From positions 1 through 64,000 of IMG/VR virus record IMGVR_UViG_3300047558_000137: a stretch of 64,000 nt of DNA; one strand, given 5' to 3'. Position 1 is the stretch's first letter, and the number at the start of each line of letters is the position of its first letter. The position numbers and the translations under genes are program-made. Below are positions 1 through 36,880 of the stretch, in pieces. The notes under the pieces are model-generated. The model ran no database searches. It saw only the letters and a program-made list of their open reading frames with translations, and was not told the origin of the DNA.

Positions 1-854
1 AGGGTTTGCCATTCATTGTTATGGTTATAACGGTTAGCTACCCAACAGCAAGGGAATAATAATCCCTGACTATTGATGTATAAACCTTTGTTACCAATAC
101 CACATAAGGGCACTATGGAGCCATGATTTTTGAATTTTTTATATAAAGTTTGATTAATTAATGGAATGACTGGGTGTCTGTTGGTAAAATTTACTGTTTC
201 TCGTTCAAATCTTAGTGTTGAGCTAATTAATTTTTTACTAGGTTCTAACGTATCGTCTGTGCCATAAGAAGGATATATACTTCCAAATTTTGTGCTTTTG
301 GTAAGCTGAAAGCGATCAACGCCTAAGGTCCTAGCTAGCGTTTGCATACGATCTAGCCGATCCTCGTTAAATTTAAATGCAATTGCAGCCCATACAATAG
401 TGCAACGGCTGGCAGCTCTTAGTGTTTGCAGTCCAGCAATTATACTATCGTAGTCGCTGTTAATGCGATAGATATTATTACTGTAGTTATCAAAACCATC
501 TATACTAAAATGTACGCTGTCAATGTCAGTTAGTACAGATCCTAGTTCTGTCCACCAGGCAATCTTCTTGTGTGAACCGTTGGTAATAATAACGATTTCA
601 ACGGGTTTGATGCTTTTAATGTAAGCAATTACTGCAATTAGATCGTGTGCATACACAGGATCGCCGTCGTCTCCGCAAAATGTAATTTTTTCTACGTTTG
701 TAGTAATAAATTCAGGAGTAAAGTTTTTCTTAAAGAATTCTAAGTCTAGCTCAGTATTAACAAGTCCGTCAGGAACTTCCTGTCTAGCACAACGTGGACA
801 GGCTAATGTACATTTACTACTAATTTCAATGTGCCAGTGCCAAGTTGCTAGCAT
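1..854 (-). CDS. Radical SAM protein (3' end runs off the window; absent from the ORF track)
   Basis: Manual translation from ATG at 854: MLATWHWHIEISSKCTLACPRCARQ (CxxxCxxC), TFCGDDGDP, ITNGS, FSIDG, and SPASM-like LFPCCW. Start overlaps the TAG of the upstream radical SAM gene. Confidence 0.9.
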   Translation of the reverse strand, partial: MLATWHWHIEISSKCTLACPRCARQEVPDGLVNTELDLEFFKKNFTPEFITTNVEKITFCGDDGDPVYAHDLIAVIAYIKSIKPVEIVIITNGSHKKIAWWTELGSVLTDIDSVHFSIDGFDNYSNNIYRINSDYDSIIAGLQTLRAASRCTIVWAAIAFKFNEDRLDRMQTLARTLGVDRFQLTKSTKFGSIYPSYGTDDTLEPSKKLISSTLRFERETVNFTNRHPVIPLINQTLYKKFKNHGSIVPLCGIGNKGLYINSQGLLFPCCWVANRYNHNNEWQT

Positions 855-1717
855 AGTTGTACGTTCCTTTGCCATTGTCCGGTAAAATTTGATATATTAT
901 TAACAGTACTACAGGTTTCTTTACAGACAGGGTTACACGCATCAGTATTCCACGATGCACGTACTTGCTCAAAATCGTCTATTGTTGTTGATCCGTGTCC
1001 TAGCCAACAGCAAGGATGCCATACACCACGGGCACTAAGATATAAACTTTGATCGTTATCTCTAAAACAATCAATTGCGCCTTGTTCTATAACAGGGCGT
1101 GTCCAAGACTTAGGGGGATTAAGCCATTTCACAGTGGGCACACGTTTGCTAACTTTAGCTCGAAACCAATTGAAGCCCATATCTCGTGCTAGCTGTTCGC
1201 AGGCGTCAACTTGATGTTCATTGTGTTCATAAACTAACATATCCCATTGGGCATTGCCACCGGCAGAGATAAATGTTTCTGCGTTACGCATTACCCTATC
1301 CCAACTAACGTTTTTTCGATAGATATGATTTGTGTCCTCTAAGCCGTCGATACTAAACACAACATAGTCTGTAGGTTTGTATAAGATGTTGGCTAGATTA
1401 GCCCACCAATACTGTCCTTGTAGTCCACCGTTAGTATTCATACCTAGCACAATGCTACTGTTTACTTCTCGCACATAAGAGAACATGGAAGTTACTTCGC
1501 TGTTAGCAGCCGGATCTCCGTAGTTTCCGCACATAAACAACTTGTCTAATCTATAGATTAGTTTTTCGTACAGCTTGAGGTCGTTAACAGTTAACCAGTT
1601 CTGATGTTTCTTATTAAAGTTTGCATCTGTTTCTCGAGCACAAGAAGGGCATGCCGCCTGACAAACGTCAGTTGGTTCTACGTGCAATACCCTAACTGTT
1701 TCAAACAATTTCGACAT
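848..1717 (-). CDS. Radical SAM protein with SPASM/twitch-like C-terminus
   Basis: CQAACPSC, MCGNYGDP, NTNGG, FSIDG, WHPCCW. Likely start is MSKLF at 1717; the track start 1753 overlaps the gp46 gene more deeply. Confidence 0.9.
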   Translation of the reverse strand: MSKLFETVRVLHVEPTDVCQAACPSCARETDANFNKKHQNWLTVNDLKLYEKLIYRLDKLFMCGNYGDPAANSEVTSMFSYVREVNSSIVLGMNTNGGLQGQYWWANLANILYKPTDYVVFSIDGLEDTNHIYRKNVSWDRVMRNAETFISAGGNAQWDMLVYEHNEHQVDACEQLARDMGFNWFRAKVSKRVPTVKWLNPPKSWTRPVIEQGAIDCFRDNDQSLYLSARGVWHPCCWLGHGSTTIDDFEQVRASWNTDACNPVCKETCSTVNNISNFTGQWQRNVQLC

Positions 1718-3473
1718 CAGTATTATATGTTGTAAATCCGTTTTCTTTAACAACCCGCAAAGTATTGTTTACACGTCCGGCTAGTTCATCTTTGTGAGAT
1801 ACTAGCCAAATGCTACGATGATTTTCCCTACTCATTTTCTTAAGAATGGCTAGACTGTTTTCAACACCCGAACTGTCCATGCCACTATCGACTAGCTCAT
1901 CGATGAATAGCAAGTTAATAGGTTGATACAAACTTTCCCATACGTCACGGAACGCCCAGCTTAAACTTAAAATAAGTCTATTGCGTTCACCACGTGACAA
2001 GTTGTCAAAGTCCAGGTCCCTGCCTAGTTCTGTAATGCTCACGGACAAGTCGTTATTAAACTTAACTGTATGCGGTAGTCCAATACGGTCTAAGTATTGA
2101 CCTAGTCGTGCATTTAGATAGCTTAGATTCTGATCAATAATACGTTTACGAATAAAACTATCTTTGTTAGTTAACAACTTTAGCAAGAACTCTTGGTGCT
2201 CTTTAAGATTGTTTAGTTCGTTCATTACGTCATAACTAATTTCTTCAACACCTTGTGTTTGCATTTCAGTAATTTGATCTGCGTATGGATCTTGTTCAGC
2301 TTCTTTTGCTGATAGCTGTGCAAGTATACTGGCCATGCTTGAACGATGCTCAAATGCATCTGACTCTTGATCATAGAACACCTGCGGTTGTGGCCCCAGT
2401 TCGCCTAGCTCTTTAAGAGCATCAGTATGTTCCATCCACTGTGTGTTTGTTGCTAGTGCTTGTAATGCGGCTTCCTGTAATGCCTGGCGTTTTTCCTCTA
2501 GCAACGTTATCTGTTTATCATCGTGGAACGCTTGTCCACAACTATGACAAGTGTGATTTTCTAGTGATTCTATGTCAGCCTTAAGTTTAGCAATTTCTTT
2601 GTTTTCACGGGCTTCGTCTAGTTCACAGCGTTTAATCCAGGTGTTTAGATCTTTAATCTGCTTTGCTTTTTCATTGTAGCGAGTTAATGCAAGATGTGCA
2701 TCAAGTTCAGCTTCGATATCTATGTGAGCAAGTTGATCATAAGCCGCTTGCAACGCTGCAACATCGTCAGTCTTTTTTGTGTTCCATAAATTCTGGCGTC
2801 GTAAGAGTGCATCAATTTGATCCTGTATACGTTTGTTAGCATCGCCAACAGCTTTAATTCGAAATTCTTCTCTAGTGATTTCTTCTTTAGTTTTCTTAAT
2901 TAATTCTTTTAGGGCTTCTGCTTTTTCACTAAGCATAGTAATGCCTAGTAACTGCTCGATAATAGTGCGTTGATCGTTTGCTTTTAATGCTAGGAACGGC
3001 TCAGTATAAGTGTTAAGTGCAACAACGTGCTTGAACATGTCGTGGCTCATGCCCAACATACGTTCAATCTCTGCCTGTGTTTCTCTGCTGTCGCCCTGTG
3101 CATCGTCTGTAATTTCTTTTTCGTTGCCTGCCACCCAGAACTTCATAATGCCAGGTTTACGACCACGTTCAATCTTATAATCGATGCCGTCTTTTTCAAA
3201 ATCAATAGTAACCAACATGTTTTTAGCATTGGTCTTATTGATTAAGTTATCTTTCTTAATGTTAGTAAGGGCGTTGCCGTAAAGGGCATAGGATAAGGCA
3301 TTAATAATAGTTGTCTTGCCCGTACCGTTACGTGCTCCGCTGTCGTCGCCCCCAAGATCTAAGTTTTCGCCTAGTACTAGCGTTAAGTCGTTACGATCAA
3401 AGTTAACAGCCTGCGTGGCATTGCCCACGCTCATAAAGTTCTTCACGGTTAAATCTTTGATCTTGAAACTCAT
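1701..3473 (-). CDS. gp46: Recombination endonuclease ATPase subunit (T4 gp46 / SbcC / Rad50-like)
   Basis: Walker A NGTGKT, zinc hook CHSC in a coiled coil, signature LSRGE, Walker B LLFIDE, H-loop VSH. Confidence 0.95.
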   Translation of the reverse strand: MSFKIKDLTVKNFMSVGNATQAVNFDRNDLTLVLGENLDLGGDDSGARNGTGKTTIINALSYALYGNALTNIKKDNLINKTNAKNMLVTIDFEKDGIDYKIERGRKPGIMKFWVAGNEKEITDDAQGDSRETQAEIERMLGMSHDMFKHVVALNTYTEPFLALKANDQRTIIEQLLGITMLSEKAEALKELIKKTKEEITREEFRIKAVGDANKRIQDQIDALLRRQNLWNTKKTDDVAALQAAYDQLAHIDIEAELDAHLALTRYNEKAKQIKDLNTWIKRCELDEARENKEIAKLKADIESLENHTCHSCGQAFHDDKQITLLEEKRQALQEAALQALATNTQWMEHTDALKELGELGPQPQVFYDQESDAFEHRSSMASILAQLSAKEAEQDPYADQITEMQTQGVEEISYDVMNELNNLKEHQEFLLKLLTNKDSFIRKRIIDQNLSYLNARLGQYLDRIGLPHTVKFNNDLSVSITELGRDLDFDNLSRGERNRLILSLSWAFRDVWESLYQPINLLFIDELVDSGMDSSGVENSLAILKKMSRENHRSIWLVSHKDELAGRVNNTLRVVKENGFTTYNTDVEIV

Positions 3474-4063
3474 TTTTTATACTGCCTCATTAAATTTTCT
3501 TTCCATGGTAACATTCTTAAGTTTGTAATTTGTGCAGCTTGCTCAATCGTCCAACCTTGTTCAAAGCATTCTTTGATTGGTACAATATGATCCAACTGCC
3601 ACCCGCCTTCTACACCGCACAAGGTCCTTGGATGCAACTCCGGATTAATGGTATCAATATTTTGGGCATAGATCTTTTGGCTTAGTCCGTGTACTTGTCG
3701 AGAATATCGGCTATATTCCTTAGACAACGGGTTTCTAATTTTCCTAGTTCCTATGCCCTTCTTTGCTACATTAGCGGTACGCTGCTGACATGAATGTGAA
3801 CAGAATTTTTTCTTAGAGGCTTGACCAACAGTAAACTCGTTTTCGCACTCTCTGCCAATACATGCTCGAGTTACTTGCCGCATTTTCTTTGGATTCGCTT
3901 TGCCGGGTTTTGCACCAACTGCTAACTGTACGTTAAGCGACTTTCTAGCTCGATACACCGTTTGCGGATGAATATTGAGAATCTTTCCAATTTCTGCTGC
4001 GGTAAGCAACGGGTTGCATATTAATTTAAGCTCTTCTGTAGTGTACACTCTTGCGGTAGCCAT
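3470..4063 (-). mobile_element. Free-standing HNH homing endonuclease-like gene between gp47 and gp46
   Basis: N-terminal HTH-like segment, C-x4-C...FCSHSC zinc-ribbon-like motif, C-terminal WQLDHIVP...NLRMLPWKEN HNH motif; splits a normally adjacent gene pair. Confidence 0.8.
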
Positions 4064-4087
4064 AGTAAACTCCTTTGGAGTATTTAC
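4061..4087 (-). promoter_or_regulatory. Late-promoter-like GTAAATA inside a hairpin that sequesters the HNH gene's Shine-Dalgarno sequence
   Basis: Minus strand reads GTAAATACTCC-AAA-GGAGTTTAC-T-ATG: 9-bp stem with a 2-nt bulge, and GGAG lies in the 3' arm. Confidence 0.7.
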
Positions 4088-4118
4088 CGATTAACAGTTA
4101 TATCTTTTATTTTAAACA

Positions 4119-5135
4119 TTAGAGGTTTCTATAGATATCTAATAATAGGTTCTTATTGAACTTGTCGCTTTCAATGCTACTTAACTGCCCAGCAACAATT
4201 TGATCTACGCTTTCAAATGCAATATTGCCTTGTATTTCATAGTCGGTTAAGTCAGTTACTTTAGCAGGGATAAGTGTAATTTCACGTAGTTTGTATGTAT
4301 CAATAAATGTTTCTTTAATAAACGTTGCTTCTTCGTAGCTGATATCAATGTCAATGTTTACACGGCAATGCATGCCTGGCTGCAACATAGATTCTGTATG
4401 TGTAACAACATCACTTAGATTAAACACACGGTACTTGGGTTGATCGGGCCATGCATGATATTCAGGTTCCTTGCCCCACTCTAAGATACAGAGTCCGCGA
4501 TCATCGTCGCCGGCATCGGCATAATTGTGTGGGAAGCAATTACCAATGTAAGTTACATTACGTTTTGTTTGTCGCTTGTGAAAATGTCCAGTGAACACAT
4601 GCTCAAAGCCTTGCAGTGCATCTACACTCATCTCGCCATGCTCGGGCATAGCAACCATTGCATTCATTAGGTATCCGGGCAGCTCAAAGTGCCCAAACAT
4701 GTATTTGCCTTTTAGTTTAGCCAGGCGTTTATGGTCGTCGCCCACAAGCCAAGGAGCAATAACCACATTACCCTGATCAAACCAGTCGTTACAGATCTGT
4801 ACGTTGGGGAGATGTTTGGCCCATTCAACACTCTGGATATCTCTTTTATCGCGATAATAGAGATCGTGGTTACCAGGAATAAAGTAGACCCTATCAAAAT
4901 TTCCATTTAAATGCTCCAGAGCCTTAAGGCTATAGTTAAGTGTAACAATATTAATGTTAGCACGATTGTTGTGCCAGTCGCCGAGAAACAGTGCTGTTTC
5001 GCAGCCTTCTTCTCGTGCTTTGGCTGTTGCCCACTTAACAAAGTTTAGGCAATCGTCGTTGTGCAGTGTGCTGTTAGATTTTAGGCCGAAATGTATATCA
5101 GTAAAGATAGCCGCTTTGCGGAATAGGTTAGTCAT
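4119..5135 (-). CDS. gp47: Recombination endonuclease nuclease subunit (T4 gp47 / SbcD / Mre11-like)
   Basis: Phosphoesterase motifs DIH, GD, GNHD, GHF, GHFH. Confidence 0.95.
   Translation of the reverse strand: MTNLFRKAAIFTDIHFGLKSNSTLHNDDCLNFVKWATAKAREEGCETALFLGDWHNNRANINIVTLNYSLKALEHLNGNFDRVYFIPGNHDLYYRDKRDIQSVEWAKHLPNVQICNDWFDQGNVVIAPWLVGDDHKRLAKLKGKYMFGHFELPGYLMNAMVAMPEHGEMSVDALQGFEHVFTGHFHKRQTKRNVTYIGNCFPHNYADAGDDDRGLCILEWGKEPEYHAWPDQPKYRVFNLSDVVTHTESMLQPGMHCRVNIDIDISYEEATFIKETFIDTYKLREITLIPAKVTDLTDYEIQGNIAFESVDQIVAGQLSSIESDKFNKNLLLDIYRNL
4712..4906 (-). CDS. Putative nested +1-frame 64-aa two-TM protein inside gp47
   Basis: GGAG 7 nt before ATG, preceded directly by TAA; two hydrophobic segments. 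Confidence 0.5.
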   Translation of the reverse strand: MEILIGSTLFLVTTISIIAIKEISRVLNGPNISPTYRSVTTGLIRVMWLLLLGLWATTINAWLN

Positions 5136-5190
5136 TGTTATAGTTTACACGAGTTAGTATTCGTTGAGCAAGAGCCTGGCCGCTCAAAGG

Positions 5191-6108
5191 TCATGCAAGG
5201 TGATCAAAGTTTCGTATAACATGGCAGTTCATATTTTGTAAATGAACTAAACAACGGTTAGCTAACTGATCAAATTTTCTAGTAAAGTTAGCGTCAAATA
5301 GTTCTCTAGCCTCGTTGTAGTTTTTAACTAGACGTTTTTTGTCGTATGCAATGGCTTGGTGTGTAGTTAAATGTTGGTGTTTGATTAAGTCCGAAAATTC
5401 AATTATATAAACATTTAGGGTCGGGAAGTGAGTCCTAAAATGGCACATACTATTCCAGGTTGATTTAATTATTTCCACCATTCTTTCCATATCGCTAGCA
5501 GTAATCTCAAACGGAGGTAAACTCTCCCAATCAACATCATCAAAATAGTGATAGTAATCAAATTGGAGACAGATTTGATTACTAACAAACCAATCCCACC
5601 AATTTTTTCTGTATACAAAATAGATATCAGGCATGCTACGAGTTATTAGATCGTAAAAAATTTTATCATCATCGTGTAACCAATAATGATCACATGGAAT
5701 ATCTCTGGGATTCCACCTGCGGTCCTTAAGATAATCAAAGTGACGGTACAATATTGATTCTAAAAATACTGTGCCGCTCCGGGCTACGTGTATAACTTGC
5801 GCTTTAGGCGAACGTGGTTGCGAACCAAATTCAAGATTACGTATTAACAAATGATCTGCATCGCACCACTTGGGACTAACAAAATCTGTGTCTAGCTGGT
5901 AAAGACTTTTGTAAGTTTCTCCAGATACAGAGGTTAAATCTGTAACAGAGTCGGGTGGTATTTCCCACACAGCATCAAAGTTCTGAATAAACGGATTTTT
6001 GGGCCACTTGCCCCCAAACTCTGATTCAAACATGTGATGCCCGGGAAACTGAGATTGGATCCACTCTCTTTCGCCCGGAACATCCTGTGTAAAAATAATT
6101 TTATTCAT
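5191..6108 (-). CDS. Sulfotransferase/P-loop-like hypothetical protein
   Basis: HVARSGTVFLESIL resembles the 5'-PSB loop; YRKNWWDWFVS resembles the 3'-PB motif. ATG at 6108 overlaps the stop of the sigma gene. Confidence 0.5.
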   Translation of the reverse strand: MNKIIFTQDVPGEREWIQSQFPGHHMFESEFGGKWPKNPFIQNFDAVWEIPPDSVTDLTSVSGETYKSLYQLDTDFVSPKWCDADHLLIRNLEFGSQPRSPKAQVIHVARSGTVFLESILYRHFDYLKDRRWNPRDIPCDHYWLHDDDKIFYDLITRSMPDIYFVYRKNWWDWFVSNQICLQFDYYHYFDDVDWESLPPFEITASDMERMVEIIKSTWNSMCHFRTHFPTLNVYIIEFSDLIKHQHLTTHQAIAYDKKRLVKNYNEARELFDANFTRKFDQLANRCLVHLQNMNCHVIRNFDHLA

Positions 6109-6976
6109 CGGAATCGTAGTGTCCGCCACCAAAGCCCATGCCTTGTCTAGTGTACGACGGATTAAGGTTGTTCATTTCAAGTATGTCATCACGAAGGTTT
6201 TGGTTACGTTTTTCAATGTTAAGAACTCGTGTAAAACTATTAGTGATCGCGGCAGTATAATAGGCAAATGGGTTCTGTGACTTTGATTCATCAAACTGCA
6301 AACCAATCTGTGATAACTGCAATAAAGCCTGACTACGCATTTCATCATTGTAAGTATACCCTCGCCAGTTCGATCTTGTTGCATAACGCTCGCACAGCTT
6401 CATAAACATGTGTGCTAGTTTGTTAGTCATTTTACCATGTTCGCGGCTAAAATGCCCTGTATCCAATTCTCCGACCCAGTGACTCTTGCCAACTAATACT
6501 GGTTCACCTGCTTCATTTACACGATAATGTTGGAATGGTGGGAAGTTGCATTTAACGTATTTGGTATTGTTAGAAATATCAATTTCGCTATCGTCATCAT
6601 ACTCGCTAGTGGGCAGGCCTTCTTCTTCCATAGCTTTCAATGCAGCCTTTCGACTTTTAGCATCGTCGACAGGAATATGGTCCCAAGTCATAACTCGAAA
6701 TACTACATCAGTGTCGGGTACGTCTTTAAGTTTGATTTCGAACTCATCTAGTTTACGCTTTGTGCCATCTGCTGTTGCAGCTTCATGCGCTAACTTTGCT
6801 AGGCGTTCTGCACGATTTTGTCGAGCTTCTTTGATGTTCTTTTTGTTTATTTTGCTAACATCAGGAAGAATGATATCATAATCAGCATCTTCTGGGTTAG
6901 AATATTTGCAATAAGTGTTTTTGCTTTTGTGAATTTCTTTAAGAATGTCTTTGTTGTTAAGATAGTTGTAACGCAC
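6101..6976 (-). CDS. gp55: Late-transcription sigma factor (T4 gp55-like)
   Basis: NYLNNKDILKEI N-terminus; NWRGYTYNDEM...FDESKSQNPFAYYTAAITNSF...EKRNQ matches the gp55 pattern. GTG start with AAGGA Shine-Dalgarno. Confidence 0.85.
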   Translation of the reverse strand: MRYNYLNNKDILKEIHKSKNTYCKYSNPEDADYDIILPDVSKINKKNIKEARQNRAERLAKLAHEAATADGTKRKLDEFEIKLKDVPDTDVVFRVMTWDHIPVDDAKSRKAALKAMEEEGLPTSEYDDDSEIDISNNTKYVKCNFPPFQHYRVNEAGEPVLVGKSHWVGELDTGHFSREHGKMTNKLAHMFMKLCERYATRSNWRGYTYNDEMRSQALLQLSQIGLQFDESKSQNPFAYYTAAITNSFTRVLNIEKRNQNLRDDILEMNNLNPSYTRQGMGFGGGHYDSDE

Positions 6977-6998
6977 TATTGTTCCTTGCTCTGTAGGT

Positions 6999-7028
6999 AT
7001 AGTAACATATTTACATTACACTAGTCAA
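6999..7028 (-). promoter_or_regulatory. Sigma70-type promoter for the gp55-like gene
   Basis: TTGACT-N18-TACTAT with extended TGn on the minus strand. Confidence 0.6.
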
Positions 7029-7072
7029 GCCTTTCTAAAACTAAAACATTAAATACCCAGTTTTTGACAGCA

Positions 7073-7079
7073 ATAAATA
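7073..7079 (+). promoter_or_regulatory. Putative late promoter (ATAAATA) heading the baseplate operon
   Basis: T4-late-like motif about 20 nt before ATG 7100; same motif at 12508, 12915, 27305, 34320 and GTAAATA at 61659. Confidence 0.6.
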
Positions 7080-7099
7080 CAGTATAAATTAGGATCTTT

Positions 7100-8101
7100 A
7101 TGCCAGTATTACCAAATTCTCCAATGCCATCGGGCTACGACACATCATCGTCTGTAACCTCACAAATTGGATCTGCATTTAAGTCTAGTTTCCTTGGTGC
7201 AGTGGGGCTAAGTTCTGCTAGTGGTCGTCAAAGTACAGCAGATATGTTTCAGTATAGCAAACGTACATCAGGTCCGGTTACACCAGCGTATAACACAAAC
7301 TTTGCCAGCAATGATTGGCGTGTTAGGATTAGTTTAGCCCCTAACAGTAAGTATTTTTACAATGACCCAAATAATAAACTGTTAAGCCCATTAGTAAAAG
7401 AAATTGGTGGCGGGTCAACAGATCCTATTGCTAGTGGTGCAATTAACCTGTTTGGCCTAGGTGGTTCTGAGTTCAGACGCATTGGTGTTGTGTTTCCATA
7501 CACTCCACAATTAGCAATCACACACGCAGCTAACTATAGCCCACAGAAACTAACACACAACAACTATGCCAACTACTTCTATGATAACTCAGAAGTGCAG
7601 GCTATCACTATTAGTGGTGAGTTTACAGTACAGAACGTTAACGAAGGACAATATCTTCTAGCAAGTGTTTACTTCTTTAGAAGTGTAACAAAAATGTTTT
7701 TTGGAAATGACCCATTGGCTGGCAATCCTCCCCCGATGGTTTATCTAAACGGTTACGGGCAGTACTATTTGCCTAACGTACCATGTGTAGTTACAAACTT
7801 TACTCACACTATGCCGGCAGAAGTTGACTATATGGATATTCCTGAGCCTGCTGCAATTTACGATCCTAGAATAAACAACTATCGACTAAACAACACTCGT
7901 TTACCTACTAGTAGTACAATGAGTGTTACATTGCAACCAGTCTACAGCAGAAAGAGTCAAAGCCAGAGCTTTAGCCTCAATGATTTTGCACGAGGGGCAT
8001 TGGTTAATGCGCCCGGTAGTGCTAAACCTTCAAGTGCATTTGGTGCAACACAACCAATGATTACTAGTAACGGTCCTAAACCTAATGGCGGATTTATCTA
8101 A
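7100..8101 (+). CDS. Baseplate tail-tube initiator/cap protein (gp48/gp54-like)
   Basis: VFPYTP, ITISGEFT and GNPPP..YLNGYG...PCVVTNF tube-fold pattern; first gene of the baseplate operon. Confidence 0.6.
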   Translation: MPVLPNSPMPSGYDTSSSVTSQIGSAFKSSFLGAVGLSSASGRQSTADMFQYSKRTSGPVTPAYNTNFASNDWRVRISLAPNSKYFYNDPNNKLLSPLVKEIGGGSTDPIASGAINLFGLGGSEFRRIGVVFPYTPQLAITHAANYSPQKLTHNNYANYFYDNSEVQAITISGEFTVQNVNEGQYLLASVYFFRSVTKMFFGNDPLAGNPPPMVYLNGYGQYYLPNVPCVVTNFTHTMPAEVDYMDIPEPAAIYDPRINNYRLNNTRLPTSSTMSVTLQPVYSRKSQSQSFSLNDFARGALVNAPGSAKPSSAFGATQPMITSNGPKPNGGFI

Positions 8102-8400
8102 TGTCTACATATTCTAAAACAAGTTTTTATAACGGCACCGGAACATGGGGCCCGTTCTTGGATATATGGGAAGGTAAAACAATACCCGCAGATGTCACTG
8201 ATGCTCTATATCAAATTGATAGTGCATACGATCAACGTCCCGATTTATTGGCGTACGACATGTATCAAGACTCAAATTTGTGGTGGGTATTTGCAATACG
8301 AAATCCAGACATTCTAATAGATCCGCTAATGAGTTTCAGAACTGGCACAATAATATATGTCCCAACAAAAGCTGTAGTAACCGCTGCTCTAGGATTATAA
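8101..8400 (+). CDS. gp53: Baseplate wedge protein (gp53/LysM-like)
   Basis: RPDLLAYDMYQDSNLWWVFAIRN motif. Confidence 0.75.
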   Translation: MSTYSKTSFYNGTGTWGPFLDIWEGKTIPADVTDALYQIDSAYDQRPDLLAYDMYQDSNLWWVFAIRNPDILIDPLMSFRTGTIIYVPTKAVVTAALGL

Positions 8401-8401
8401 T

Positions 8402-10492
8402 ATGGCAACTATAAAGACGCCATCATCGACGGTATATATACCAAACCCTTTAAATGAATTTGCTTCATACACATATTCATGGAGTCTTTGGTATTTGGAT
8501 GTTGTAGACTACAATGGATTAATGAGTCAAACTGATGCTAATTCAGCAATGAATTATAACCTATCCAACAAAAGTTTTGTATTGGCACAGGATGGCGGTA
8601 TATTTCCATCTAGGCGAGTCCCTGGTAATCCGCTTAACTATAATATACAATCTGTAAAATTTAAAACAGCAATTGCTCCTGGAAAAATTAACAGAAGCAG
8701 TAATATGCTAGATGGGTCTATGGTTGTTGTAGAACCCTACGGTGTTACTTTTATTGAAAACTTAATAGAAGCTGGATTTAACAGCGGCGGTAACTATACA
8801 CTGCGCCCATATCTTTTACAATTAGAATTTAAAGGATACGACGACACTGGGGAGCCTATGCCTAGTTCGTTAACTACACATCTACGTAGACGCTTTCCGG
8901 TAATACTAAAGAATATAAAAGTAGGAATGACCAACAAAGGTGCTGAATACAACATAGATTTTACAGCAACAGGCTCGAAGGCATTTTATCCTAGTAATTC
9001 TTCGACCCCTAAAACTTTTACTGTCATAGCAGGAACAGTTGGAGAATTTTTTACACTGTTATCCGGTAGATATTATGAACATTTTGTGCAACAGGTATTA
9101 CAAGGAAATGCACAGTGGGTGGAAACAGTAAAATTTGAAATAGACCCAGAAATAGCAAAAAGTCCTATTGTTAATAAAAATCAAATACCATTGACCCATG
9201 CAAATAGTAGTGCTAAGGATATAGACTTTACTAAATCAACATTTACTATTCCTGCCAATACTCCTGTATTAGATATTATTACTAGAGTAATGTCGCACAG
9301 TGACTTTTTATTAAAAGAACAACTAAAGATAGATAACCTCGAAGGCAATGTAAAAAAATCCGAGTATGATGTATTCACAGCATTTAAAACTACATCTCGA
9401 GTTAAACTAGTTGGATCGGACTTTGAAGGAAATCCAATTGGCGAAGGTGTAATTGATAATGTTACTGGAAAATACCCATTGTCGATTACCTATGGAATTA
9501 GACCATATCCGACCTGGATGAGTAGCCATGCTGCGATGCCTAAGTTTTCTAATAGTAAGCCCTATACTATCAAAGAATACAACTACTATTACACCGGTAA
9601 AAACACAGATATCATTGAGTTAAAATTAGACTTTGATACAACATACTATTCAACAATGTTAGGATATACCAATGCAATTGCTGCACAAGAAACCACCCCG
9701 GTTACCGAGGATGCAGAAAATAGCATGGATATTACAAAACCTAAGGTTGTAACACCTAACCCTGCTGTTCAATTGGCGTCTATTCCTAACATTACACCTA
9801 TACAATATCGTCGTGTGGTTAATAATCCTAACGTTACTGTGGGCATGAACTTGTCTAGTAGACCTGCTGCACAAGTTGCTGCTGATGTATTAAATTCGAT
9901 ATATACATCAGATCCTGCAGCAGCTATTACACTGGACCTAACTATAACTGGCGATCCTATGTTGATTAAACAGGACGATTGGTTGTACTTTCCAAGTCCA
10001 ACTAATTCATCAGACTACAATAACTATGACAGCGTTAGCCAGGCAGACTTTGCTAAGAAGTATGGGCATCTCAGAATGGACACTGGAGAGCTAGTTGCGC
10101 TAGTTGTAATAAACACTCCAATGGATATTGACATAGATACTGTAAACCAAGGATTAGTAGACCCACTGCCTGGTTATAGTCGATCTATGTTTAGCGGAAG
10201 ATATCGTATATTAATGATTGACAGTACATTTGCAAATGGTAAGTTTGAACAAAAGTTAACTATGGCTAGATATCTAAGTGATGACTTAGCAGCAGTATTC
10301 AACCCCACAGGAAGTCAACGCCAGGATACTGATGCAGTAACAACTAGTAGGAACAATCAAACAAGCATTATTAGTGAAAATCAACAAGATTTTAACAGAC
10401 AAGTGTTAAAAGTACAGTCTGACGCCGCAGGCAACCCTGAAGGCGATTGGGGAACTCAAACAGGCGATCAGGGAAATCAAAAAAGAAATTAA
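8402..10492 (+). CDS. Baseplate hub protein (gp27-like)
   Basis: 696 aa between the gp53-like and gp5-like genes; LTITGDP and SGRYRILMIDSTFANGKFEQKL hub-type C-terminus. Confidence 0.6.
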   Translation: MATIKTPSSTVYIPNPLNEFASYTYSWSLWYLDVVDYNGLMSQTDANSAMNYNLSNKSFVLAQDGGIFPSRRVPGNPLNYNIQSVKFKTAIAPGKINRSSNMLDGSMVVVEPYGVTFIENLIEAGFNSGGNYTLRPYLLQLEFKGYDDTGEPMPSSLTTHLRRRFPVILKNIKVGMTNKGAEYNIDFTATGSKAFYPSNSSTPKTFTVIAGTVGEFFTLLSGRYYEHFVQQVLQGNAQWVETVKFEIDPEIAKSPIVNKNQIPLTHANSSAKDIDFTKSTFTIPANTPVLDIITRVMSHSDFLLKEQLKIDNLEGNVKKSEYDVFTAFKTTSRVKLVGSDFEGNPIGEGVIDNVTGKYPLSITYGIRPYPTWMSSHAAMPKFSNSKPYTIKEYNYYYTGKNTDIIELKLDFDTTYYSTMLGYTNAIAAQETTPVTEDAENSMDITKPKVVTPNPAVQLASIPNITPIQYRRVVNNPNVTVGMNLSSRPAAQVAADVLNSIYTSDPAAAITLDLTITGDPMLIKQDDWLYFPSPTNSSDYNNYDSVSQADFAKKYGHLRMDTGELVALVVINTPMDIDIDTVNQGLVDPLPGYSRSMFSGRYRILMIDSTFANGKFEQKLTMARYLSDDLAAVFNPTGSQRQDTDAVTTSRNNQTSIISENQQDFNRQVLKVQSDAAGNPEGDWGTQTGDQGNQKRN

Positions 10493-10502
10493 GGATCAAT
10501 AA

Positions 10503-11888
10503 ATGGGAAGTTCAGATAGTATAAGACGCTCTGGTGCAAATCCGGATGCAAGAGCAGACTCAAAAATTTCGGGTTATATCTCTGATGCTGGTCCCTACGA
10601 AGCTGTGGTTGTGGGAGTTGTTGAAGGCAGTCGCATGGGACAGTTATTAGTAGATATCATTGATTGGCAAGGCGCAATTACTGAACTAGGTTCCGGTGAT
10701 GTACATGCTATCCCTGTGTCCTATGCAAGTCCTTTTTACGGAACAACGTATGGTGCAGATTCACAACAATTGCCTGATGCACCTATTGCGTCAGCACAAA
10801 GTTATGGTATGTGGTTCGTTCCTCCGGACATTGGTAACAAAGTATTAGTTACATTTGTTGCTGGCGATATGAGCAGGGGATATTGGTTTGCCTGTATATA
10901 CGATACACCCAGTCACCATATGGTTCCAGCCATTGGTCGTAACGTTGGTGGTAAGGATAAAGTTCGGAATCCAGGTGACCAATTAAGTCGATATTTAACG
11001 AGTGATAGTATAGTTCCTGTTGCGGAGGCTAGAACGTCAGACCCAGAGCTATGGGGCAACGATGGTCTGGAAAAAGTTTCAAGATACCCCCACGAGGTAC
11101 AAACTTCAAAATTTGTTATGCAAGGACTTGATCGTGATCCTCTACGTGGTGCAATTAGTTCTAGTAGTCTTAGAGAAAGTCCCAGCAATGTTTACGGAAT
11201 CAGTACACCGGGTCGTAAGTTAGGAAATTCAATTGGTCAAATTGCCCAGGTACGAGCCGGGGGACATCAATTTGTAATGGATGACGGTGATAAAGATGGC
11301 AAAGATCAATTAATGCGCTTACGTACAAGTGGTGGGCATCAAATTTTGATGAACGATTCGGAAAACATAATGTACATAGCCAGTTCTACAGGTCAACAAT
11401 GGTTAGAATTTAGTGCAGACGGCAGTATTAACATCTTTGGCGCTGCGGGCATTAATATGAGATCAATGGGGCCAATTAACATGCATAGTGATAGTGCTAT
11501 TAACATGGATGCTATGGCAATTAAAATTAACGGATCGTTGTCTGTTGGTATTACTAGTTTAGGCACATTCAGTGCTAGTGCCATTGGCAGCGCAACAGTA
11601 AAAGCTAATGGCTCTTTATCACTAAGTGGAATGGGCATGGCCAGTTTAAGCGCCGGCGGAAGTTTAACAATGTCAGCAATGGGCGTATGTAGTGTGGCAG
11701 GATCAGCGTTGAAACTAAATTCACCTCCTGGTGGTAAGCCGCCTATGCCGGCGCTACCTTCATTGGGCAAGCCACACAAAGAGTCAAACTTCAATGGAAG
11801 TTATTGGCAAAAGGATGCAAAAATAACAACTTCGATTTGTACAGTAGTTCCAGCACATGAACCATGGGAAAGACCTGAGAAGAAATGA
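10503..11888 (+). CDS. Baseplate central spike (gp5/VgrG-like)
   Basis: OB-fold GMWFVPPDIGNKVLVTF, RTSGGHQILMND, beta-helix repeats, C-terminal CTVVPAHEPW. Confidence 0.75.
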   Translation: MGSSDSIRRSGANPDARADSKISGYISDAGPYEAVVVGVVEGSRMGQLLVDIIDWQGAITELGSGDVHAIPVSYASPFYGTTYGADSQQLPDAPIASAQSYGMWFVPPDIGNKVLVTFVAGDMSRGYWFACIYDTPSHHMVPAIGRNVGGKDKVRNPGDQLSRYLTSDSIVPVAEARTSDPELWGNDGLEKVSRYPHEVQTSKFVMQGLDRDPLRGAISSSSLRESPSNVYGISTPGRKLGNSIGQIAQVRAGGHQFVMDDGDKDGKDQLMRLRTSGGHQILMNDSENIMYIASSTGQQWLEFSADGSINIFGAAGINMRSMGPINMHSDSAINMDAMAIKINGSLSVGITSLGTFSASAIGSATVKANGSLSLSGMGMASLSAGGSLTMSAMGVCSVAGSALKLNSPPGGKPPMPALPSLGKPHKESNFNGSYWQKDAKITTSICTVVPAHEPWERPEKK

Positions 11889-12511
11889 TAGAACAAGGTT
11901 TATTTCACGCAGCAAAATTAGGAGTAAAAACTCCTTTACCTGCCAGCTGGCTAGGTCGTGCCGATGCGCCCAATCTGTTGCCACAATGGGCAACTATTAA
12001 TAATTTAACATCGGCCCAAGTACAAAATCTACAAGCACAGATAGGATACGATTATAGCACGTGGGATTATCGTAAGGTCGGCAACAATAATGAACTAGGT
12101 AGATATCAATTTACCACAACTCAACTTGAGGACTATGGACTACTTACATTTGGATCAAATAAAGCCTATGGTATTGATTGTATTAATCGCCGTGCTTGTT
12201 GGAAATCATCTATTATCCGCAGCAGTAATTCCTATGCAAATTACATATATAACGTAACAAATCTAGACGAATTTTTAAATAGCAAAGCATCGCAAGATCA
12301 CCTATGCTATCAAAGAATATATGATCTTTATAATGAATTAACAGTTAGCGGTGGGATACAACCCAGTGACACTGCTGAAACTATAGCCGGGATGATTTCT
12401 GTAGCATGGTTATTAGGCAACGGTGCATATAATTGGAGATACTATAATATAGGCGATGGGGCAAATGCTTTTAACAGTGGCCGCTATGCAGTCGCAGTAT
12501 TAAGTCAATAA
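11885..12511 (+). CDS. Possible tail-associated lysozyme-like protein
   Basis: LGRYQF motif typical of lysozyme-fold enzymes; follows a spike gene lacking a lysozyme domain. Confidence 0.45.
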   Translation: MIEQGLFHAAKLGVKTPLPASWLGRADAPNLLPQWATINNLTSAQVQNLQAQIGYDYSTWDYRKVGNNNELGRYQFTTTQLEDYGLLTFGSNKAYGIDCINRRACWKSSIIRSSNSYANYIYNVTNLDEFLNSKASQDHLCYQRIYDLYNELTVSGGIQPSDTAETIAGMISVAWLLGNGAYNWRYYNIGDGANAFNSGRYAVAVLSQ

Positions 12512-12519
12512 ATATTACT

Positions 12520-12894
12520 ATGATTACATACTCTGGGTTCAGCACAAAAGTCAATCTTAAACGATATAAGCTCAATGATTTTGAGCTAGTTAAACAAGAC
12601 TTGAAAAATTATTTAAGTATCAGACGTGGCGAAAAGTTAATGCAACCAAAGTTTGGGACCATAATATGGGAAATGCTGTTTGAACCATTGAATCAGGATA
12701 CAGAACAGCTAATCATACAAGATATTAACAAAATCGCTGCGTACGATCCTAGATTAACGATCACACAAGTTGCAATTGCACAGCAGGATACTGGACTTCT
12801 GATAGATTTAACATTAATTTATAATCCCACTAATCAACAAGAAGTCCTAAGTTTAAATTTCAACAGAAATACTCAAAGATTAACAACCAATTAA
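12520..12894 (+). CDS. gp25: Baseplate wedge subunit (gp25-like)
   Basis: RRGEKLMQPKFGTIIWEMLFEP...YDPRL. Confidence 0.9.
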   Translation: MITYSGFSTKVNLKRYKLNDFELVKQDLKNYLSIRRGEKLMQPKFGTIIWEMLFEPLNQDTEQLIIQDINKIAAYDPRLTITQVAIAQQDTGLLIDLTLIYNPTNQQEVLSLNFNRNTQRLTTN

Positions 12895-12939
12895 CTAGCC
12901 ATATTATACGTCTAATAAATACTAGATAAGGTATAGAAT

Positions 12940-15900
12940 ATGGCACAAACCACACGTCAAACAAATCTTTTAGTACAGCAAGACTGGACTAAAATCTACC
13001 AGACATTTACAAACGCGGACTTTACCAGCTACGATTTCGAAACGCTGCGTAATTCCATGATCAATTACTTAAAGACTTACTACCCAGAAACATTCAATGA
13101 TTTCATTGAAAGTAGCGAGTATCTTGCGCTAATTGATATGATTGCGTTCCTGGGACAAAGTTTGGCGTTCCGCACAGATTTAAACGCACGTGAGAACTTT
13201 ATTGATACTGCACAACGCCGTGACAGTATTTTAAAGCTAGCACGTATGTTAAGCTACAATCCTGGGCGTACAACAGCGGCATCTGGATTGTTAAAAATTA
13301 ACAGTATCAGAACCACTGAGTCAGTGTACGATAGCAATGGGGTAAACCTAGCCAACACTACAGTTAACTGGAATGATCTAACTAACGATAACTGGTTAGA
13401 ACAATTTACCTCAGTGTTTAACGCCAGTTTAATTTCAACTGAAATGATTGGTAAGCCTGGTAATAGCCAAAAACTAAATGGCATCCAAACAGAAGAATAC
13501 AGTATTGCGCTAAACCCAAATACTTTACCGGTTGCAAGTTTTAACGTAAACATACAAGGCAATCCTGTTGCATTTGAAGCGGTAAGTGCAACCACAGTGG
13601 GCAAAACATACATATATCAAGAAGATCCAACTATTCAAGGAAAATTTAATGTTCTGTACCGCAACGACAATAATGGCAACGGTAGTAATAACACTGGATT
13701 CTTTTTGTATTTTAAGCAAGGTACATTAAATGTTACACAGTTTAACATCACTAATGCTATCCCTAACAATTACGTAACCGTTGCTACAAATAATATTACC
13801 AATGAAGATCAATGGTTGTATGCATTAGATGTTAACGGAAACCCATCTGTGGCGTGGAATAAAGTACCTGCATTGCCGGGATACAACGTTGTGTTTAATA
13901 ACATGTCAGACAAAGACTTGTACCAAGTTAACACACGAAACAATGACCAAGTTGATTTGATTTTTGGCGATGGTAGTTTTGCCAACGTTCCTCAGGGCAA
14001 ATTCAAATTCTATTACAGAACAAGCAATGGTACAACCTACAGTATCACTCCTGATGACCTAAGTGCTGTAAGTATTGCCTTTAATTATATCAGTAAGAAG
14101 AATACTCCTGAGACGCTGACCGTAACAGCCAGCTTAAATTATACAGTTAATAATGCAAATGCTGCTCCGAGTTTAAGTAGTATCAAGAGTGCTGCCCCTC
14201 AACAATACTATACACAGAACCGCATGATAACCGGGGAAGATTACAATATCTTCCCACAGACAACTTTTAGTAGCATACAAAAGATTAAGGCAATTAATCG
14301 TACAAGCTCTGGAGTTAGTTTATATCTTGATGCCATTGATCCAACAGGTAGCTACAGTACAACTAACATATTTGGCGATGATGGTGTTATCTCGGCTAAC
14401 AGCGACACTAAATCTACTACATTTAGTTTCTTAACTACCAATGATGTTTACTCTGCAATTTATAACAAGGTTATTCCTATTATAGATTCAACAGAAGTTA
14501 AAAATTATTACTATTCAACATATCAACGTTACGATAGCACTCACGCCAATGTTACATTTAGTCAGACAGGAAATACTACAGTATCAAGTTCGGGGTATTT
14601 ACAATATAACAATACAACTCAACAAGTTGGCACAGGAATTGCAGGTAATTTAAGATATGTTAACACTGGCGCAACATTACGATTTTTTGCCCCGAGTGGA
14701 TATCACTTTAATTCACAGCATGAAATTATGCCTGGCGATCCTTTTGACTCTGGCGACACACTAAGTTTTTATGCTGCCGTGTCGGATGTAGTTAGTAACA
14801 GCGATGTCACAACTCCTAGTCTAGTTACATTTGCTACGGTTGTGCCTGATGGTGCAATACTTGGGGATATTACAGAAGCTGGGTTGAATTGTATCATTCC
14901 TGCCTACAAAAACGATCTGAGTACTGCGTTAATTAATACATTAATTACCCAAATTAAGGCTAAGGTTAATTTTGGACTAAAATTTGATCAAGTTAACCAG
15001 ATATGGAAAAACATTTTACCAGCCGACATTGGTAGCAGTACAGACTGGTTATTAAAGTTTACATATACACAAGGTTACTACACTATTAGCTATAAGTCAT
15101 TATCGTACTCTTTCACCACTAATGGAAGTACTAAATTTTATTTTGATCCTGCTACACGAGTTTACAATTCAACCACCGGATTAAATGTAATAGACACTAT
15201 TAAACTATTAAAAATTAATACCAAGCCTAGCTCTGCTGAAAGCCTAGGAGAGGACGTATTGTGGCAAATTTACAATACTATTACCTATCCCGATGGATAT
15301 GTAGATGATTCTACAATATTAGTTAGATCCACTGAATCGCAATTATTAGGTGTTCCTGATAATCCTGATTTGTATACTACGGTTGCTGATTCTGCATCAA
15401 GTCGCGGCGATTTGTATTTCCAATACAAACATAATGTGCCTGCACGTAATCGTGTTGATCCTACACCAGTTAATATTGTTGATTTATATATCTTAACATC
15501 ATCGTACTCAGCTGATTACATTAACTGGTTAAGAGATTTAACAGGAACAGTCACAGAGCCAGAACCAACTACTACAGGCGAACTAGAAATTGAATATGGC
15601 TCACTTGATAGTTATAAAGCTGTGAGCGACACTATTGTTTATAGTCCCGCAAGATTTAAACCATTGTTTGGAGATAAGGCCCCATCTAATTTACAGGCCG
15701 TGTTCCAGGTTGTTAAGAATCCTAATGTTGGTTTAACTGACAACGAAATTAAAACACAAGTTGTAGCAGAAATTAACAAATATTTTGATCCACAAAATTG
15801 GGATTTTGGTGAAACATTTTATTTTAGTGAGCTAGCAGCATATCTACATGCACAACTAGCACCAAACATATCTAGTGTGGTTATTGTTCCTGCGGATCAC

Positions 15901-27305: not shown

Positions 27306-27364
27306 TAAATACTGATAAATCGCAATTATCAAATAATAATTCGGAACAAACTGAGGAAAATACA

Positions 27365-28009: not shown

Positions 28010-28013
28010 TACA

Positions 28014-29624: not shown

Positions 29625-29627
29625 TAC

Positions 29628-32316: not shown

Positions 32317-32368
32317 TAAATTAATTAGATTTTTGATAAGTATACTATAAAGAAAAGAATAACGTATT

Positions 32369-34312: not shown

Positions 34313-34349
34313 TAAGCCCATAAATATACTAAAGATCAAAGGATAAAAC

Positions 34350-35861: not shown

Positions 35862-35873
35862 GGATAAAGTAGA

Positions 35874-36869: not shown

Positions 36870-36880
36870 TCCCAATCCAA

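What the first reader, a model, noticed from the sequence alone, without database searches (positions are those of the whole stretch)
4712..4917. Nested two-TM ORF within the gp47 (Mre11-like) nuclease gene
Minus strand reads GGAG-CATTTAA-ATG, then 64 aa MEILIGSTLFLVTTISIIAI...GLIRVMWLLLLGLWATTINAWLN overlapping the GNHD catalytic motif. The +1 frame is also open for about 43 codons upstream of the TAA, hinting at a tandem arrangement. It shows overprinting extends to a core recombination gene on the opposite strand.
Basis: partly seen in the sequence, partly recalled or inferred. Interest (0 to 1): 0.6.

Follow-up and report, generated by a model that had tools for sequence, protein, structure and literature searches.

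The report
Conserved membrane-peptide gene hidden inside gp47
A 64-codon reading frame nested inside a giant phage's Mre11-like nuclease gene is kept open, with its own start signal and two water-repelling helices, in most of about 175 related uncultivated phages, so it is very probably a real, unannotated overlapping gene for a small membrane protein of unknown role.

Summary
The ORF is at window 4712..4906 (minus strand), in the +1 frame of the gp47/SbcD-like gene (4119..5135, same strand). GGAG, a 7-nt spacer and ATG are as described.

In this genome alone it is unremarkable. 46 ATG ORFs of 64 codons or more lie in the +1 frame of 264 long genes.

Comparison with IMG/VR relatives (61-88% gp47 identity) changes the verdict:
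- In the closest 80 relatives, +1-frame stops over codons 77-129 are 6 observed against 150 expected. The lowest ratio in any control window is 0.62.
- All six stop-prone columns are depleted.
- Synonymous choices keep the ATG (76/81) and the GGAG (Glu GAG 72% against 26% expected).
- The two strongest excesses of hydrophobicity in three genes and two frames coincide with the two predicted helices.
- AlphaFold2 gives a helical hairpin (pLDDT 81).

No homologue exists outside this locus. Cultured relatives at 46-48% identity have stops in the frame. The gene is therefore young, specific to this clade, and was born by overprinting. It is broken in about a fifth of relatives, so it is an accessory gene.

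The conserved core is about 53 codons. The upstream "tandem" ORF is not generally conserved. Translation and function are untested.

The parts
4119..5135 (-). Host gene: gp47 / SbcD-Mre11-like recombination nuclease, 338 aa
   Evidence: Pfam Metallophos (E 1.3e-5). PHROG 100, SbcD-like subunit (E 6.7e-59). 46-48% aa identity to the SbcD-like proteins of PA5oct, RaK2 and 121Q. Flanked by a gp46/SbcC-like gene and a gp55-like late sigma factor gene.
4914..4917 (-). Shine-Dalgarno GGAG of the nested gene, 7 nt before the ATG; built from Leu73 (NTG) and Glu74 (GAG) of gp47
   Evidence: Glu74 is GAG in 58/81 relatives (26% expected). Leu73 is NTG in 67/81 (34% expected). GGAG is present in 48/81 and GGA in a further 21. 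The local RNA is no more structured than shuffles (z +0.78).
4904..4906 (-). ATG start of the nested gene, formed by Asn77 AAT plus the G of codon 78
   Evidence: Asn77 is AAT in 76/81 relatives (54% expected). ATG is kept in 122/141 and 144/176.
4748..4906 (-). Conserved core of the nested ORF (nested codons 1-53): helix 1, basic loop, helix 2 up to the invariant Gly53
   Evidence: +1-frame stops: 6 observed against 150.5 expected in 81 sequences. All 6 stop-prone columns have obs/exp of 0.14 or less, against 5.9% of 186 control columns (Mann-Whitney p 4.7e-5). This is the lowest of about 2,200 control windows and it starts exactly at codon 77.
4847..4900 (-). Predicted transmembrane helix 1 (nested residues about 3-20), laid over the FIPGNHDLYY catalytic motif of gp47
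   Evidence: Hydropathy exceeds the synonymous null (position z up to 8.6; Ile18 invariant in 81/81). These are among the top windows of 2,418 controls. AF2 places helix H2-27 here.
4787..4846 (-). Loop (nested residues 21-40), net basic
   Evidence: 1.95 K+R against 0.48 D+E per sequence. Hydropathy and wobble composition sit at the null, yet stops are still avoided.
4742..4786 (-). Predicted transmembrane helix 2 (nested residues about 41-55)
   Evidence: Hydropathy excess (z up to 10 at residues 49-52). Second peak among the control windows. AF2 places helix H34-63 here.
4712..4741 (-). Variable C-terminal tail and TAA stop of the window's version (nested residues 56-64)
   Evidence: Relatives end after 53/54, 61, 64 or 79/80 codons. 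Hydropathy is at the null and stop depletion is only partial (obs/exp 0.4-0.7).
4907..5041 (-).
   Evidence: Open across codons 31-75 in 17/110 relatives of the split form. No hydrophobic excess and only mild stop depletion (obs/exp 0.57; column test p 0.005). No SD before the TTG. Fused to the nested ORF in a subclade.

Best explanation
This is a real, unannotated protein-coding gene overprinted in the +1 frame of the gp47 (SbcD/Mre11-like) nuclease gene, in one clade of uncultivated jumbo phages. Ribosomes most likely start internally on the gp47 mRNA at a GGAG-7nt-ATG site that is written entirely with synonymous choices of gp47 codons 73-77. They would make a peptide of 53-64 residues (up to 80 in some relatives). 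The peptide would fold as a two-helix hairpin and insert into the host inner membrane. The basic loop would face the cytoplasm and both ends the periplasm.

In this frame the second position of each nested codon is the wobble base of the gp47 codon. Choosing T at gp47 wobble positions therefore writes hydrophobic residues without changing gp47. This is how a membrane hairpin could be laid over the invariant FIPGNHD active-site motif.

What is shown: the frame, the start site and the hydrophobic character are under selection, and the gene has no relatives elsewhere. What is inferred: translation, membrane insertion, topology and timing (with gp47, so early or middle if the T4 pattern holds).

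The function is not determined. My best guess (about 0.3) is an accessory early membrane protein of the kind phages use for superinfection exclusion or to tamper with a host membrane protein. A holin or spanin role is less likely. The gene is broken in roughly a fifth of relatives, so it is dispensable.
For: - Stop depletion. Across 81 orthologues (76-88% gp47 aa identity; 60 remain after removing pairs above 85% nt identity; third-position identity 47%), +1 stops in codons 77-129 are 6 observed against 150.5 expected, while the rest of the gene runs at 0.76-0.86.
- Context specificity. NTA codons make up 1% of Leu/Ile/Val codons where they would create a stop, against 23% where harmless. Outside the region the figures are 27% and 38%.
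- Controls. In gp46, the gp55-like gene and gp47, both frames, the lowest 53-codon window elsewhere is 0.62. The gp47 +1 window starting exactly at codon 77 is 0.043.
- Column test. 6 of 6 stop-prone columns have obs/exp of 0.14 or less, against 5.9% of 186 control columns; p 4.7e-5.
- Many independent events. These columns show at least 26-46 codon changes on the tree.
- Start site. AAT 76/81, GAG 58/81 and NTG 67/81, against 54%, 26% and 34% expected.
- Hydrophobicity. It exceeds the synonymous null only in two segments of about 18 residues. The top 20 of 2,418 control windows all fall there.
- The loop is net basic.
- AF2 predicts a hairpin with pLDDT 81.
- Wider sampling. In 176 unique sequences (61-88% identity), 146 are open for 53 codons or more and 128 also keep the ATG.
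- Disruptions are scattered tip events (at least 15), with no old clade of broken copies.
- Clade limits. Relatives at 46-48% identity have several stops in the frame, except GC-rich Phosso, which is open but has ACG for the ATG. A sister group at 60-64% lacks the ATG and helix 2.
Against: - There is no expression evidence.
- Classical synonymous-site diversity is only 11-15% lower in the helices and is not reduced in the loop. Residue identity is barely constrained (mean column identity 46%).
- Only six columns carry the stop-depletion signal.
- The margin of the hydrophobic excess over the best control window is moderate (0.90 against 0.67).
- About 27% of the 176 sequences lack the ATG, have an early stop, or both.
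- The nulls assume codon usage pooled over sites and genomes.
- The AF2 alignment rows are tied to the gp47 frame, so their covariation is not independent evidence.
Confidence: 0.78

Rival explanations
1. Chance open frame with no function. The +1 frame of AT-rich genes is poor in stops and rich in hydrophobic codons, and the openness in relatives is inherited rather than selected.
For: The same genome holds 46 ATG ORFs of 64 aa or more in +1 frames. Only about 1.7-2.7 stops per sequence are expected in this stretch. The null hydropathy of the helix-1 stretch is already positive (about 1.1-1.25). The outgroups show a similar semi-hydrophobic pattern over FIPGNHD.
Against: Third positions are near saturation, and the six stop-prone columns changed codon at least 26-46 times on the tree, yet they almost never reach the stop-forming codon. 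The control genes and frames never fall below 0.62. The ATG and GGAG are kept by synonymous choices. The outgroups do carry stops.
Confidence: 0.08
2. The constraint acts on nucleic acid, not on a protein: an RNA structure, a regulatory site or a DNA signal inside gp47 biases wobble bases.
For: Wobble T is enriched in two blocks. The window carries a 26-nt near-palindrome at 4839..4864.
Against: The palindrome is specific to the window (24/26 matches here, typically 14-16 in relatives). RNA around the start folds no better than shuffles. A structure would not specifically avoid TAA, TAG and TGA in one frame, including in the loop where composition is at baseline. Nor would it keep an ATG with a GGAG 7 nt upstream. 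Synonymous diversity is hardly reduced, which argues against a sequence-specific element.
Confidence: 0.04
3. The frame is translated, but only the act of translation matters, for example to tune gp47 or gp46 expression or mRNA stability. The peptide itself is inert.
For: Residue identity is weakly constrained. The ORF end is variable.
Against: Selection for hydrophobic residues in two helix-length blocks, an invariant Ile18 and Gly29/42/53, and a basic loop all point to a constrained product. A purely regulatory ORF would not need 53 codons.
Confidence: 0.07
4. The frame is reached by programmed frameshifting from gp47, giving a nuclease N-terminal fragment fused to a membrane hairpin. There is no separate start.
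For: The two frames are on the same strand. An A_AAT_TTT heptamer sits at gp47 codons 78-80.
Against: That heptamer would shift by -1 into the other frame, which is full of stops. A +1-frame stop sits immediately before the ATG in 110/141 relatives. The conserved ATG and GGAG indicate independent initiation.
Confidence: 0.03

Closest known systems
Lambda Rz1 embedded in Rz (two-component spanin, embedded architecture)
   Same: A small gene lies wholly inside another gene, on the same strand and in the +1 frame. It has its own ribosome-binding site and its product is targeted to the envelope (own knowledge; embedded spanins are reviewed in PMC6139136, listed but not read).
   Different: Rz1 is an outer-membrane lipoprotein with a lipobox signal peptide, and it works together with the protein of its host gene. 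Here there is no lipobox, the product is a two-helix hairpin, and the host gene is a cytoplasmic nuclease with no evident functional link. There is no sequence or family match.
phiX174 gene E inside gene D; lysis gene L of MS2-like RNA phages
   Same: A short membrane protein was born by overprinting in an alternative frame of an unrelated essential gene, and its hydrophobic helix carries most of the constraint (own knowledge; overprinting in viruses is reviewed in PMC8227390 and PMC3494269, listed but not read).
   Different: Those are tiny genomes under strong size pressure, and their products have one TM helix and cause lysis. This is a 374-kb genome with no obvious need for compaction, the product has two helices, and there is no evidence for a lysis role.
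Small early membrane proteins of T4-like phages (for example Imm, 83 aa with two TM segments, superinfection immunity) and class II holins or pinholins (S21-68, two TM segments)
   Same: Size class, two TM helices, and likely co-expression with early or middle genes (own knowledge).
   Different: No sequence or profile similarity. No charged C-terminal tail. Not in a lysis cassette. Encoded inside another gene rather than standing alone.
De novo membrane proteins from thymine-rich sequence (yeast proto-genes; own knowledge, not checked in the library)
   Same: T at the second codon position gives hydrophobic residues, so T-rich frames readily yield TM helices.
   Different: Here the T-rich positions are the wobble bases of an existing, highly conserved gene rather than intergenic DNA.

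Membership tests
Functional overlapping (overprinted) protein-coding gene | Alternative frame kept open across diverged relatives beyond the synonymous-codon expectation | tested here: met
   6 observed against 150.5 expected stops in 81 sequences, and 43 against 332 in 176 sequences. The control minimum is 0.62. Column test p 4.7e-5.
Functional overlapping (overprinted) protein-coding gene | Conserved translation start signals | tested here: met
   ATG in 76/81 and 144/176. GGAG is favoured by the synonymous choices GAG (72% against 26%) and NTG (83% against 34%).
Functional overlapping (overprinted) protein-coding gene | Reduced synonymous variability of the host gene over the overlap | tested here: inconclusive
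   Obs/exp is 0.85-0.89 in the two helices and 1.05 in the loop. Dips of the same size occur elsewhere in the gene (0.78 at codon 265).
Functional overlapping (overprinted) protein-coding gene | Evidence of translation (Ribo-seq, proteomics) | not testable with these tools
Two-pass inner-membrane hairpin protein | Two hydrophobic stretches of TM length separated by a short polar loop | tested here: met
   The 17-residue Kyte-Doolittle score is 1.6 or more in both halves in 90% of 102 peptides. AF2 gives helices 2-27 and 34-63, pLDDT 81. The loop has 1.95 K+R. Actual membrane insertion was not tested.
Class II holin / pinholin | Match to a holin family profile | tested here: not met
   No Pfam, PHROGs or NCBIfam hit. 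No BFVD structure match at E of 0.001 or better.
Class II holin / pinholin | Charged, basic C-terminal cytoplasmic tail | tested here: not met
   The tail has 0.39 K+R against 0.89 D+E per sequence, and it is absent in the 53/54-residue forms.
Class II holin / pinholin | Location in a lysis cassette next to an endolysin | tested here: not met
   It lies inside gp47. The neighbours are the gp46-like gene, an HNH/HTH endonuclease-like ORF, an unknown 313-aa ORF and the gp55-like sigma factor gene.
Embedded o-spanin (Rz1-like) | Lipoprotein signal peptide with a lipobox Cys, embedded in an i-spanin gene | tested here: not met
   No conserved lipobox or Cys: position 16 is Cys in only 48/81 and Ser in the window. 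The host gene is a Metallophos nuclease, not an i-spanin.
gp47 / SbcD-Mre11 nuclease (the host gene) | Calcineurin-like phosphoesterase domain with the GNHD motif, next to an SbcC/gp46 ATPase gene | tested here: met
   Pfam PF00149 and PHROG 100. GNHD at residues 88-91. The gp46-like gene (AAA_23/SMC_N) lies downstream.

The most novel reading that the evidence does not exclude
A core DNA-recombination gene of a jumbo phage doubles as the template for a recently born membrane protein. The new protein's two helices are written purely in the wobble bases of the nuclease's invariant active-site motif. The clade would then preserve several stages of gene birth: a sister group with only the first hydrophobic stretch and no start, a split form with its own SD-ATG, and a fused three-helix form with an upstream GTG start. 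It would be a natural, densely sampled time series of de novo membrane-gene origin by overprinting, in a genome that is under no size pressure.
Probability: 0.3. Interest if true: 0.75.

Novelty: new member of a known kind. Interest (0 to 1): 0.62.

Why it matters
Gene callers forbid nested genes, and this one is absent from every annotation examined. In a library of 1.84 billion protein representatives it appears once, and only because an assembly gap had broken gp47.

If the gene is real, it shows that overprinting is not confined to tiny, space-limited viruses. It also creates new membrane proteins inside the most conserved core genes of 370-kb phages.

It gives a clean worked example of the mechanism. 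In the +1 frame the host gene's wobble base is the second codon position of the new gene, so T at wobble positions writes a TM helix at no cost to the host protein.

It also carries a practical lesson. Single-genome ORF length and classical synonymous-rate scans both miss it. Frame-specific stop avoidance and start-site conservation across many relatives find it.

Tried and rejected
- Megablast of gp47 against GenBank phages found no near relative.
- Seven cultured or named relatives at 46-48% identity were fetched. None annotates a nested ORF. All but GC-rich Phosso have stops in the frame, and Phosso has ACG in place of the ATG.
- Pfam, PHROGs and NCBIfam on the peptide gave no hit.
- The ESM Atlas feature search gave only unnamed clusters below 0.9, which is not informative.
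- The word-indexed protein search with the 102-sequence profile gave no hit.
- The exhaustive HMM search gave one hit, and it is the same locus.
- Foldseek against BFVD gave generic helical hairpins, none at E of 0.001 or better.
- The sigma-70 promoter and terminator scan found nothing above the shuffle expectation and no internal promoter for the nested gene.
- The 26-nt palindrome was tested as an alternative constraint and is not conserved.
- The association between ATG loss and an open upstream frame is strong in raw counts (10/19 against 3/122). It rests on only 3-4 independent contrasts and is not significant (p 0.125-0.25).
- The raw wobble composition of the helix blocks is confounded by the amino-acid make-up of gp47, and some outgroups look similar. 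I rely on the tests that condition on the amino acid.
- No complex-prediction job was sent, because no binding claim is made.

Full report
**What is in the window**

The window is the first 64 kb of a 374,314-bp IMG/VR virus record with 41% G+C. On the minus strand lie five genes in a row:
- a gp46/SbcC-like gene (1701..3473; AAA_23 and SMC_N);
- an ORF with an HTH and an HNH or endonuclease VII-like domain (3470..4063);
- the gp47/SbcD-like nuclease gene (4119..5135; 338 aa; Metallophos; PHROG 100);
- an ORF of 313 aa with no family match (5191..6132);
- a gp55-like late sigma factor gene (6101..6976).

It runs from the ATG at 4906 to the TAA at 4714..4712 and codes for 64 aa. GGAG lies at 4917..4914, followed by a 7-nt spacer. 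The ORF is on the same strand as gp47, in the +1 frame, and starts at position 2 of gp47 codon 77. It runs over the FIPGNHD motif. The +1 frame upstream is open for 45 codons and ends at the TAA that touches the ATG.

**Is it more than chance in this one genome? No.**

Given the gp47 protein and the local codon usage, only about 2.7 +1-frame stops are expected in these 64 codons. The genome has 46 ATG ORFs of 64 aa or more in the +1 frame of 264 long genes, against 2 in the +2 frame. By length alone the finding is ordinary.

**Relatives**

GenBank phages hold no near relative. The best are PA5oct, RaK2, 121Q, XaC1, Atu_ph07 and similar jumbo phages at 46-48% gp47 identity. I collected 175 unique gp47 orthologues at 61-88% aa identity. 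Third codon positions among non-redundant members are 47% identical, which is close to saturation.

**The frame is kept open**

In the closest 80 relatives plus the window, +1-frame stops in gp47 codons 77-129 number 6, against 150.5 expected from synonymous codon usage (ratio 0.04). The rest of the gene runs at 0.76-0.86.

The avoidance depends on context. Inside the region, NTA codons are 23% of Leu/Ile/Val codons when the next codon begins with C or T, where they are harmless. They are 1% when it begins with A or G, where they would make a stop. Outside the region the figures are 38% and 27%.

As a control I ran the same scan on gp46 (45 sequences), the gp55-like gene (70 sequences) and gp47, in both alternative frames. 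The lowest 53-codon window anywhere else is 0.62. The minimum of 0.043 lies in gp47 +1 and begins exactly at codon 77.

Taking alignment columns rather than sequences as the units removes the problem of shared ancestry. All six stop-prone columns inside 77-129 have obs/exp of 0.14 or less. Only 5.9% of 186 control columns do (Mann-Whitney p 4.7e-5). On a tree built without the overlap region, these columns changed codon at least 26-46 times. The rarity of the stop-forming codon is therefore not inherited from a few ancestors.

With all 176 sequences the ratio is 0.13 (43 against 332). 146 sequences are open for at least 53 codons.

**The start site is kept**

- Asn77 is AAT rather than AAC in 76/81 sequences (54% expected). 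With the G of codon 78 this gives the ATG.
- Glu74 is GAG in 58/81 (26% expected).
- Leu73 is CTG or TTG in 67/81 (34% expected). Together these give GGAG.
- RNA around the site is no more structured than shuffled sequence.

**The product looks like a membrane hairpin**

All the following tests condition on the gp47 amino acids. The nested peptides are more hydrophobic than synonymous randomisation predicts, but only in two blocks, nested residues about 3-20 and 41-55. The loop and the tail sit at the null. In a control set of 2,418 windows of 18 codons from three genes and two frames, the top 20 all fall on these two blocks. Their best value is 0.90, against 0.67 for the best window elsewhere.

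Ile18 is invariant in the first 81 sequences. Gly29, Gly42 and Gly53 are invariant in 102 distinct peptides. The loop carries about two basic residues and few acidic ones. By the positive-inside rule this puts the loop in the cytoplasm.

AlphaFold2 on the 102-sequence alignment gives two helices (2-27 and 34-63) at mean pLDDT 81. I treat this as consistent rather than independent evidence, because the rows are tied to the gp47 frame.

**How a helix can be laid over an active site**

In this frame, nested codon positions 1 and 3 are gp47 positions 2 and 1, which are fixed wherever gp47 is conserved. Nested position 2 is the gp47 wobble base. T at a second codon position specifies Phe, Leu, Ile, Met or Val. 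Choosing T-ending synonymous codons in FIPGNHDLYY therefore writes LFLxxxIxII at no cost to the nuclease. The null hydropathy of that stretch is already positive (about 1.1-1.25), so the site was predisposed.

**Limits of the evidence**

Comparable dips occur elsewhere in the gene. Selection is on openness and hydrophobic character, not on residue identity; mean column identity of the peptides is 46%.
- Only six columns carry the stop signal.
- Raw wobble composition is confounded by amino-acid content, and some outgroups resemble it.

**Extent, variants and losses**

The conserved core is 53 codons. Relatives end after 53/54, 61, 64 or 79/80 codons.

In the 141-sequence set, 18 copies are cut before codon 53. 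These arose in at least 15 separate tip events, often through Val103 GTA giving TAG, with the frame still open beyond. That is the pattern expected of short-lived disruptions of an accessory gene, or of assembly errors.

Nineteen of the 141 have ACG instead of ATG. In ten of these the +1 stop before the start is also gone. The frame then runs 37-58 codons further upstream through a third hydrophobic stretch, to a GTG preceded by AAGGAGG in several of them. The association is striking in raw counts, but it rests on 3-4 independent contrasts (p 0.125-0.25).

In the ordinary split form, the upstream ORF is open in only 17/110 relatives. It shows no hydrophobic excess and only mild stop depletion (0.57), and in the window it has no SD. 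I do not count it as a gene here.

A sister group at 60-64% gp47 identity lacks the ATG and helix 2. The cultured jumbo phages at 46-48% have several stops in the frame, apart from GC-rich Phosso, which is open but has ACG at the start position. The gene is therefore specific to this clade and young.

**No relatives elsewhere**

Pfam, PHROGs, NCBIfam, the ESM Atlas, the word-indexed search and BFVD fold search all gave nothing. The exhaustive profile search of 1.84 billion representatives found one protein, P0001 (54 aa, E 2.7e-20). It is this same nested ORF, on an ENA contig where a run of N interrupts gp47 and so let the gene caller see it. None of the seven GenBank records inspected annotates anything inside gp47.

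**Comparison with known systems**

In architecture this is the Rz1-in-Rz and E-in-D type of embedded +1-frame gene. It fails the tests for o-spanins (no lipobox; the host gene is not an i-spanin). It also fails the tests for holins (no family match, no basic C-terminal tail, not in a lysis cassette). In size and shape it resembles small early membrane proteins such as T4 Imm, but no similarity supports membership. These comparisons rest on my own knowledge of those systems.

**Verdict**

- Real overlapping gene for a small two-helix membrane protein: about 0.78.
- Function is open. I lean towards an accessory early membrane protein for superinfection exclusion or host-membrane modulation (about 0.3) over a lysis role (about 0.15).
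- It is a new member of a known kind.
- Interest is moderate to high. The comparative support is unusually dense, the host gene is a core recombination nuclease in a genome with no size pressure, and the clade appears to preserve several stages of the gene's birth.

Noticed in passing
window 3470..4063 (-): A 197-aa ORF sits between gp47 and gp46, overlapping the gp46 start by 4 nt. It has an N-terminal HTH (HTH_23) and C-terminal matches to HNH / endonuclease VII-type PHROGs, so it looks like a free-standing homing endonuclease inserted between the two nuclease subunit genes. A relative (L170) has a different 297-aa ORF at that position.
   Followed up: partly
window 5191..6132 (-): A 313-aa ORF between gp47 and the gp55-like sigma gene has no Pfam or PHROGs match. 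Full-length orthologues (at least 90% coverage) were found in only 2 of the 80 related loci, so this is a variable slot in an otherwise syntenic gp55-gp47-gp46 block. Its listed TTG start overlaps the end of the sigma gene by 32 nt.
   Followed up: no
window 4839..4864: A 26-nt near-perfect palindrome (24/26 self-complementary) encodes LYYRDKRD inside gp47, itself a palindrome-nuclease homologue. It is specific to this genome: relatives score 14-16 of 26.
   Followed up: yes
whole genome G000 (window is 1..64000): 46 ATG ORFs of 64 aa or more (10 of them 100 aa or more, maximum 160) lie in the +1 frame of 264 long genes, against 2 in the +2 frame. Most are expected by chance given the low +1 stop density (0.063 per codon). 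Other 'overprinting' calls in this genome need the comparative test before they are believed. gp46 and the gp55-like gene showed no such signal.
   Followed up: partly
gp47 codons about 223-243 (window about 4407..4469, -): There is a smaller excess of +1-frame hydrophobicity (+0.6 over the null) in a stretch where no stops are expected anyway. There is no start signal, and it was not examined further.
   Followed up: no
L069, L080, L132, L139, L141, L161, L163, L166, L167, L094 (gp47 codons about 45-129): In these relatives the nested ATG is ACG and the +1 frame runs on upstream through an extra hydrophobic stretch to a GTG, which is preceded by AAGGAGG in L069, L141 and L094. The result is a possible three-helix protein of about 85 residues.
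   Followed up: partly
L170 2270..2370 (ENA contig ERZ4231649 NODE_3552): A run of N inside gp47 on this contig stopped the gene caller from calling gp47. That is the only reason the nested ORF exists as a protein record (P0001) in the public catalogue.
   Followed up: yes
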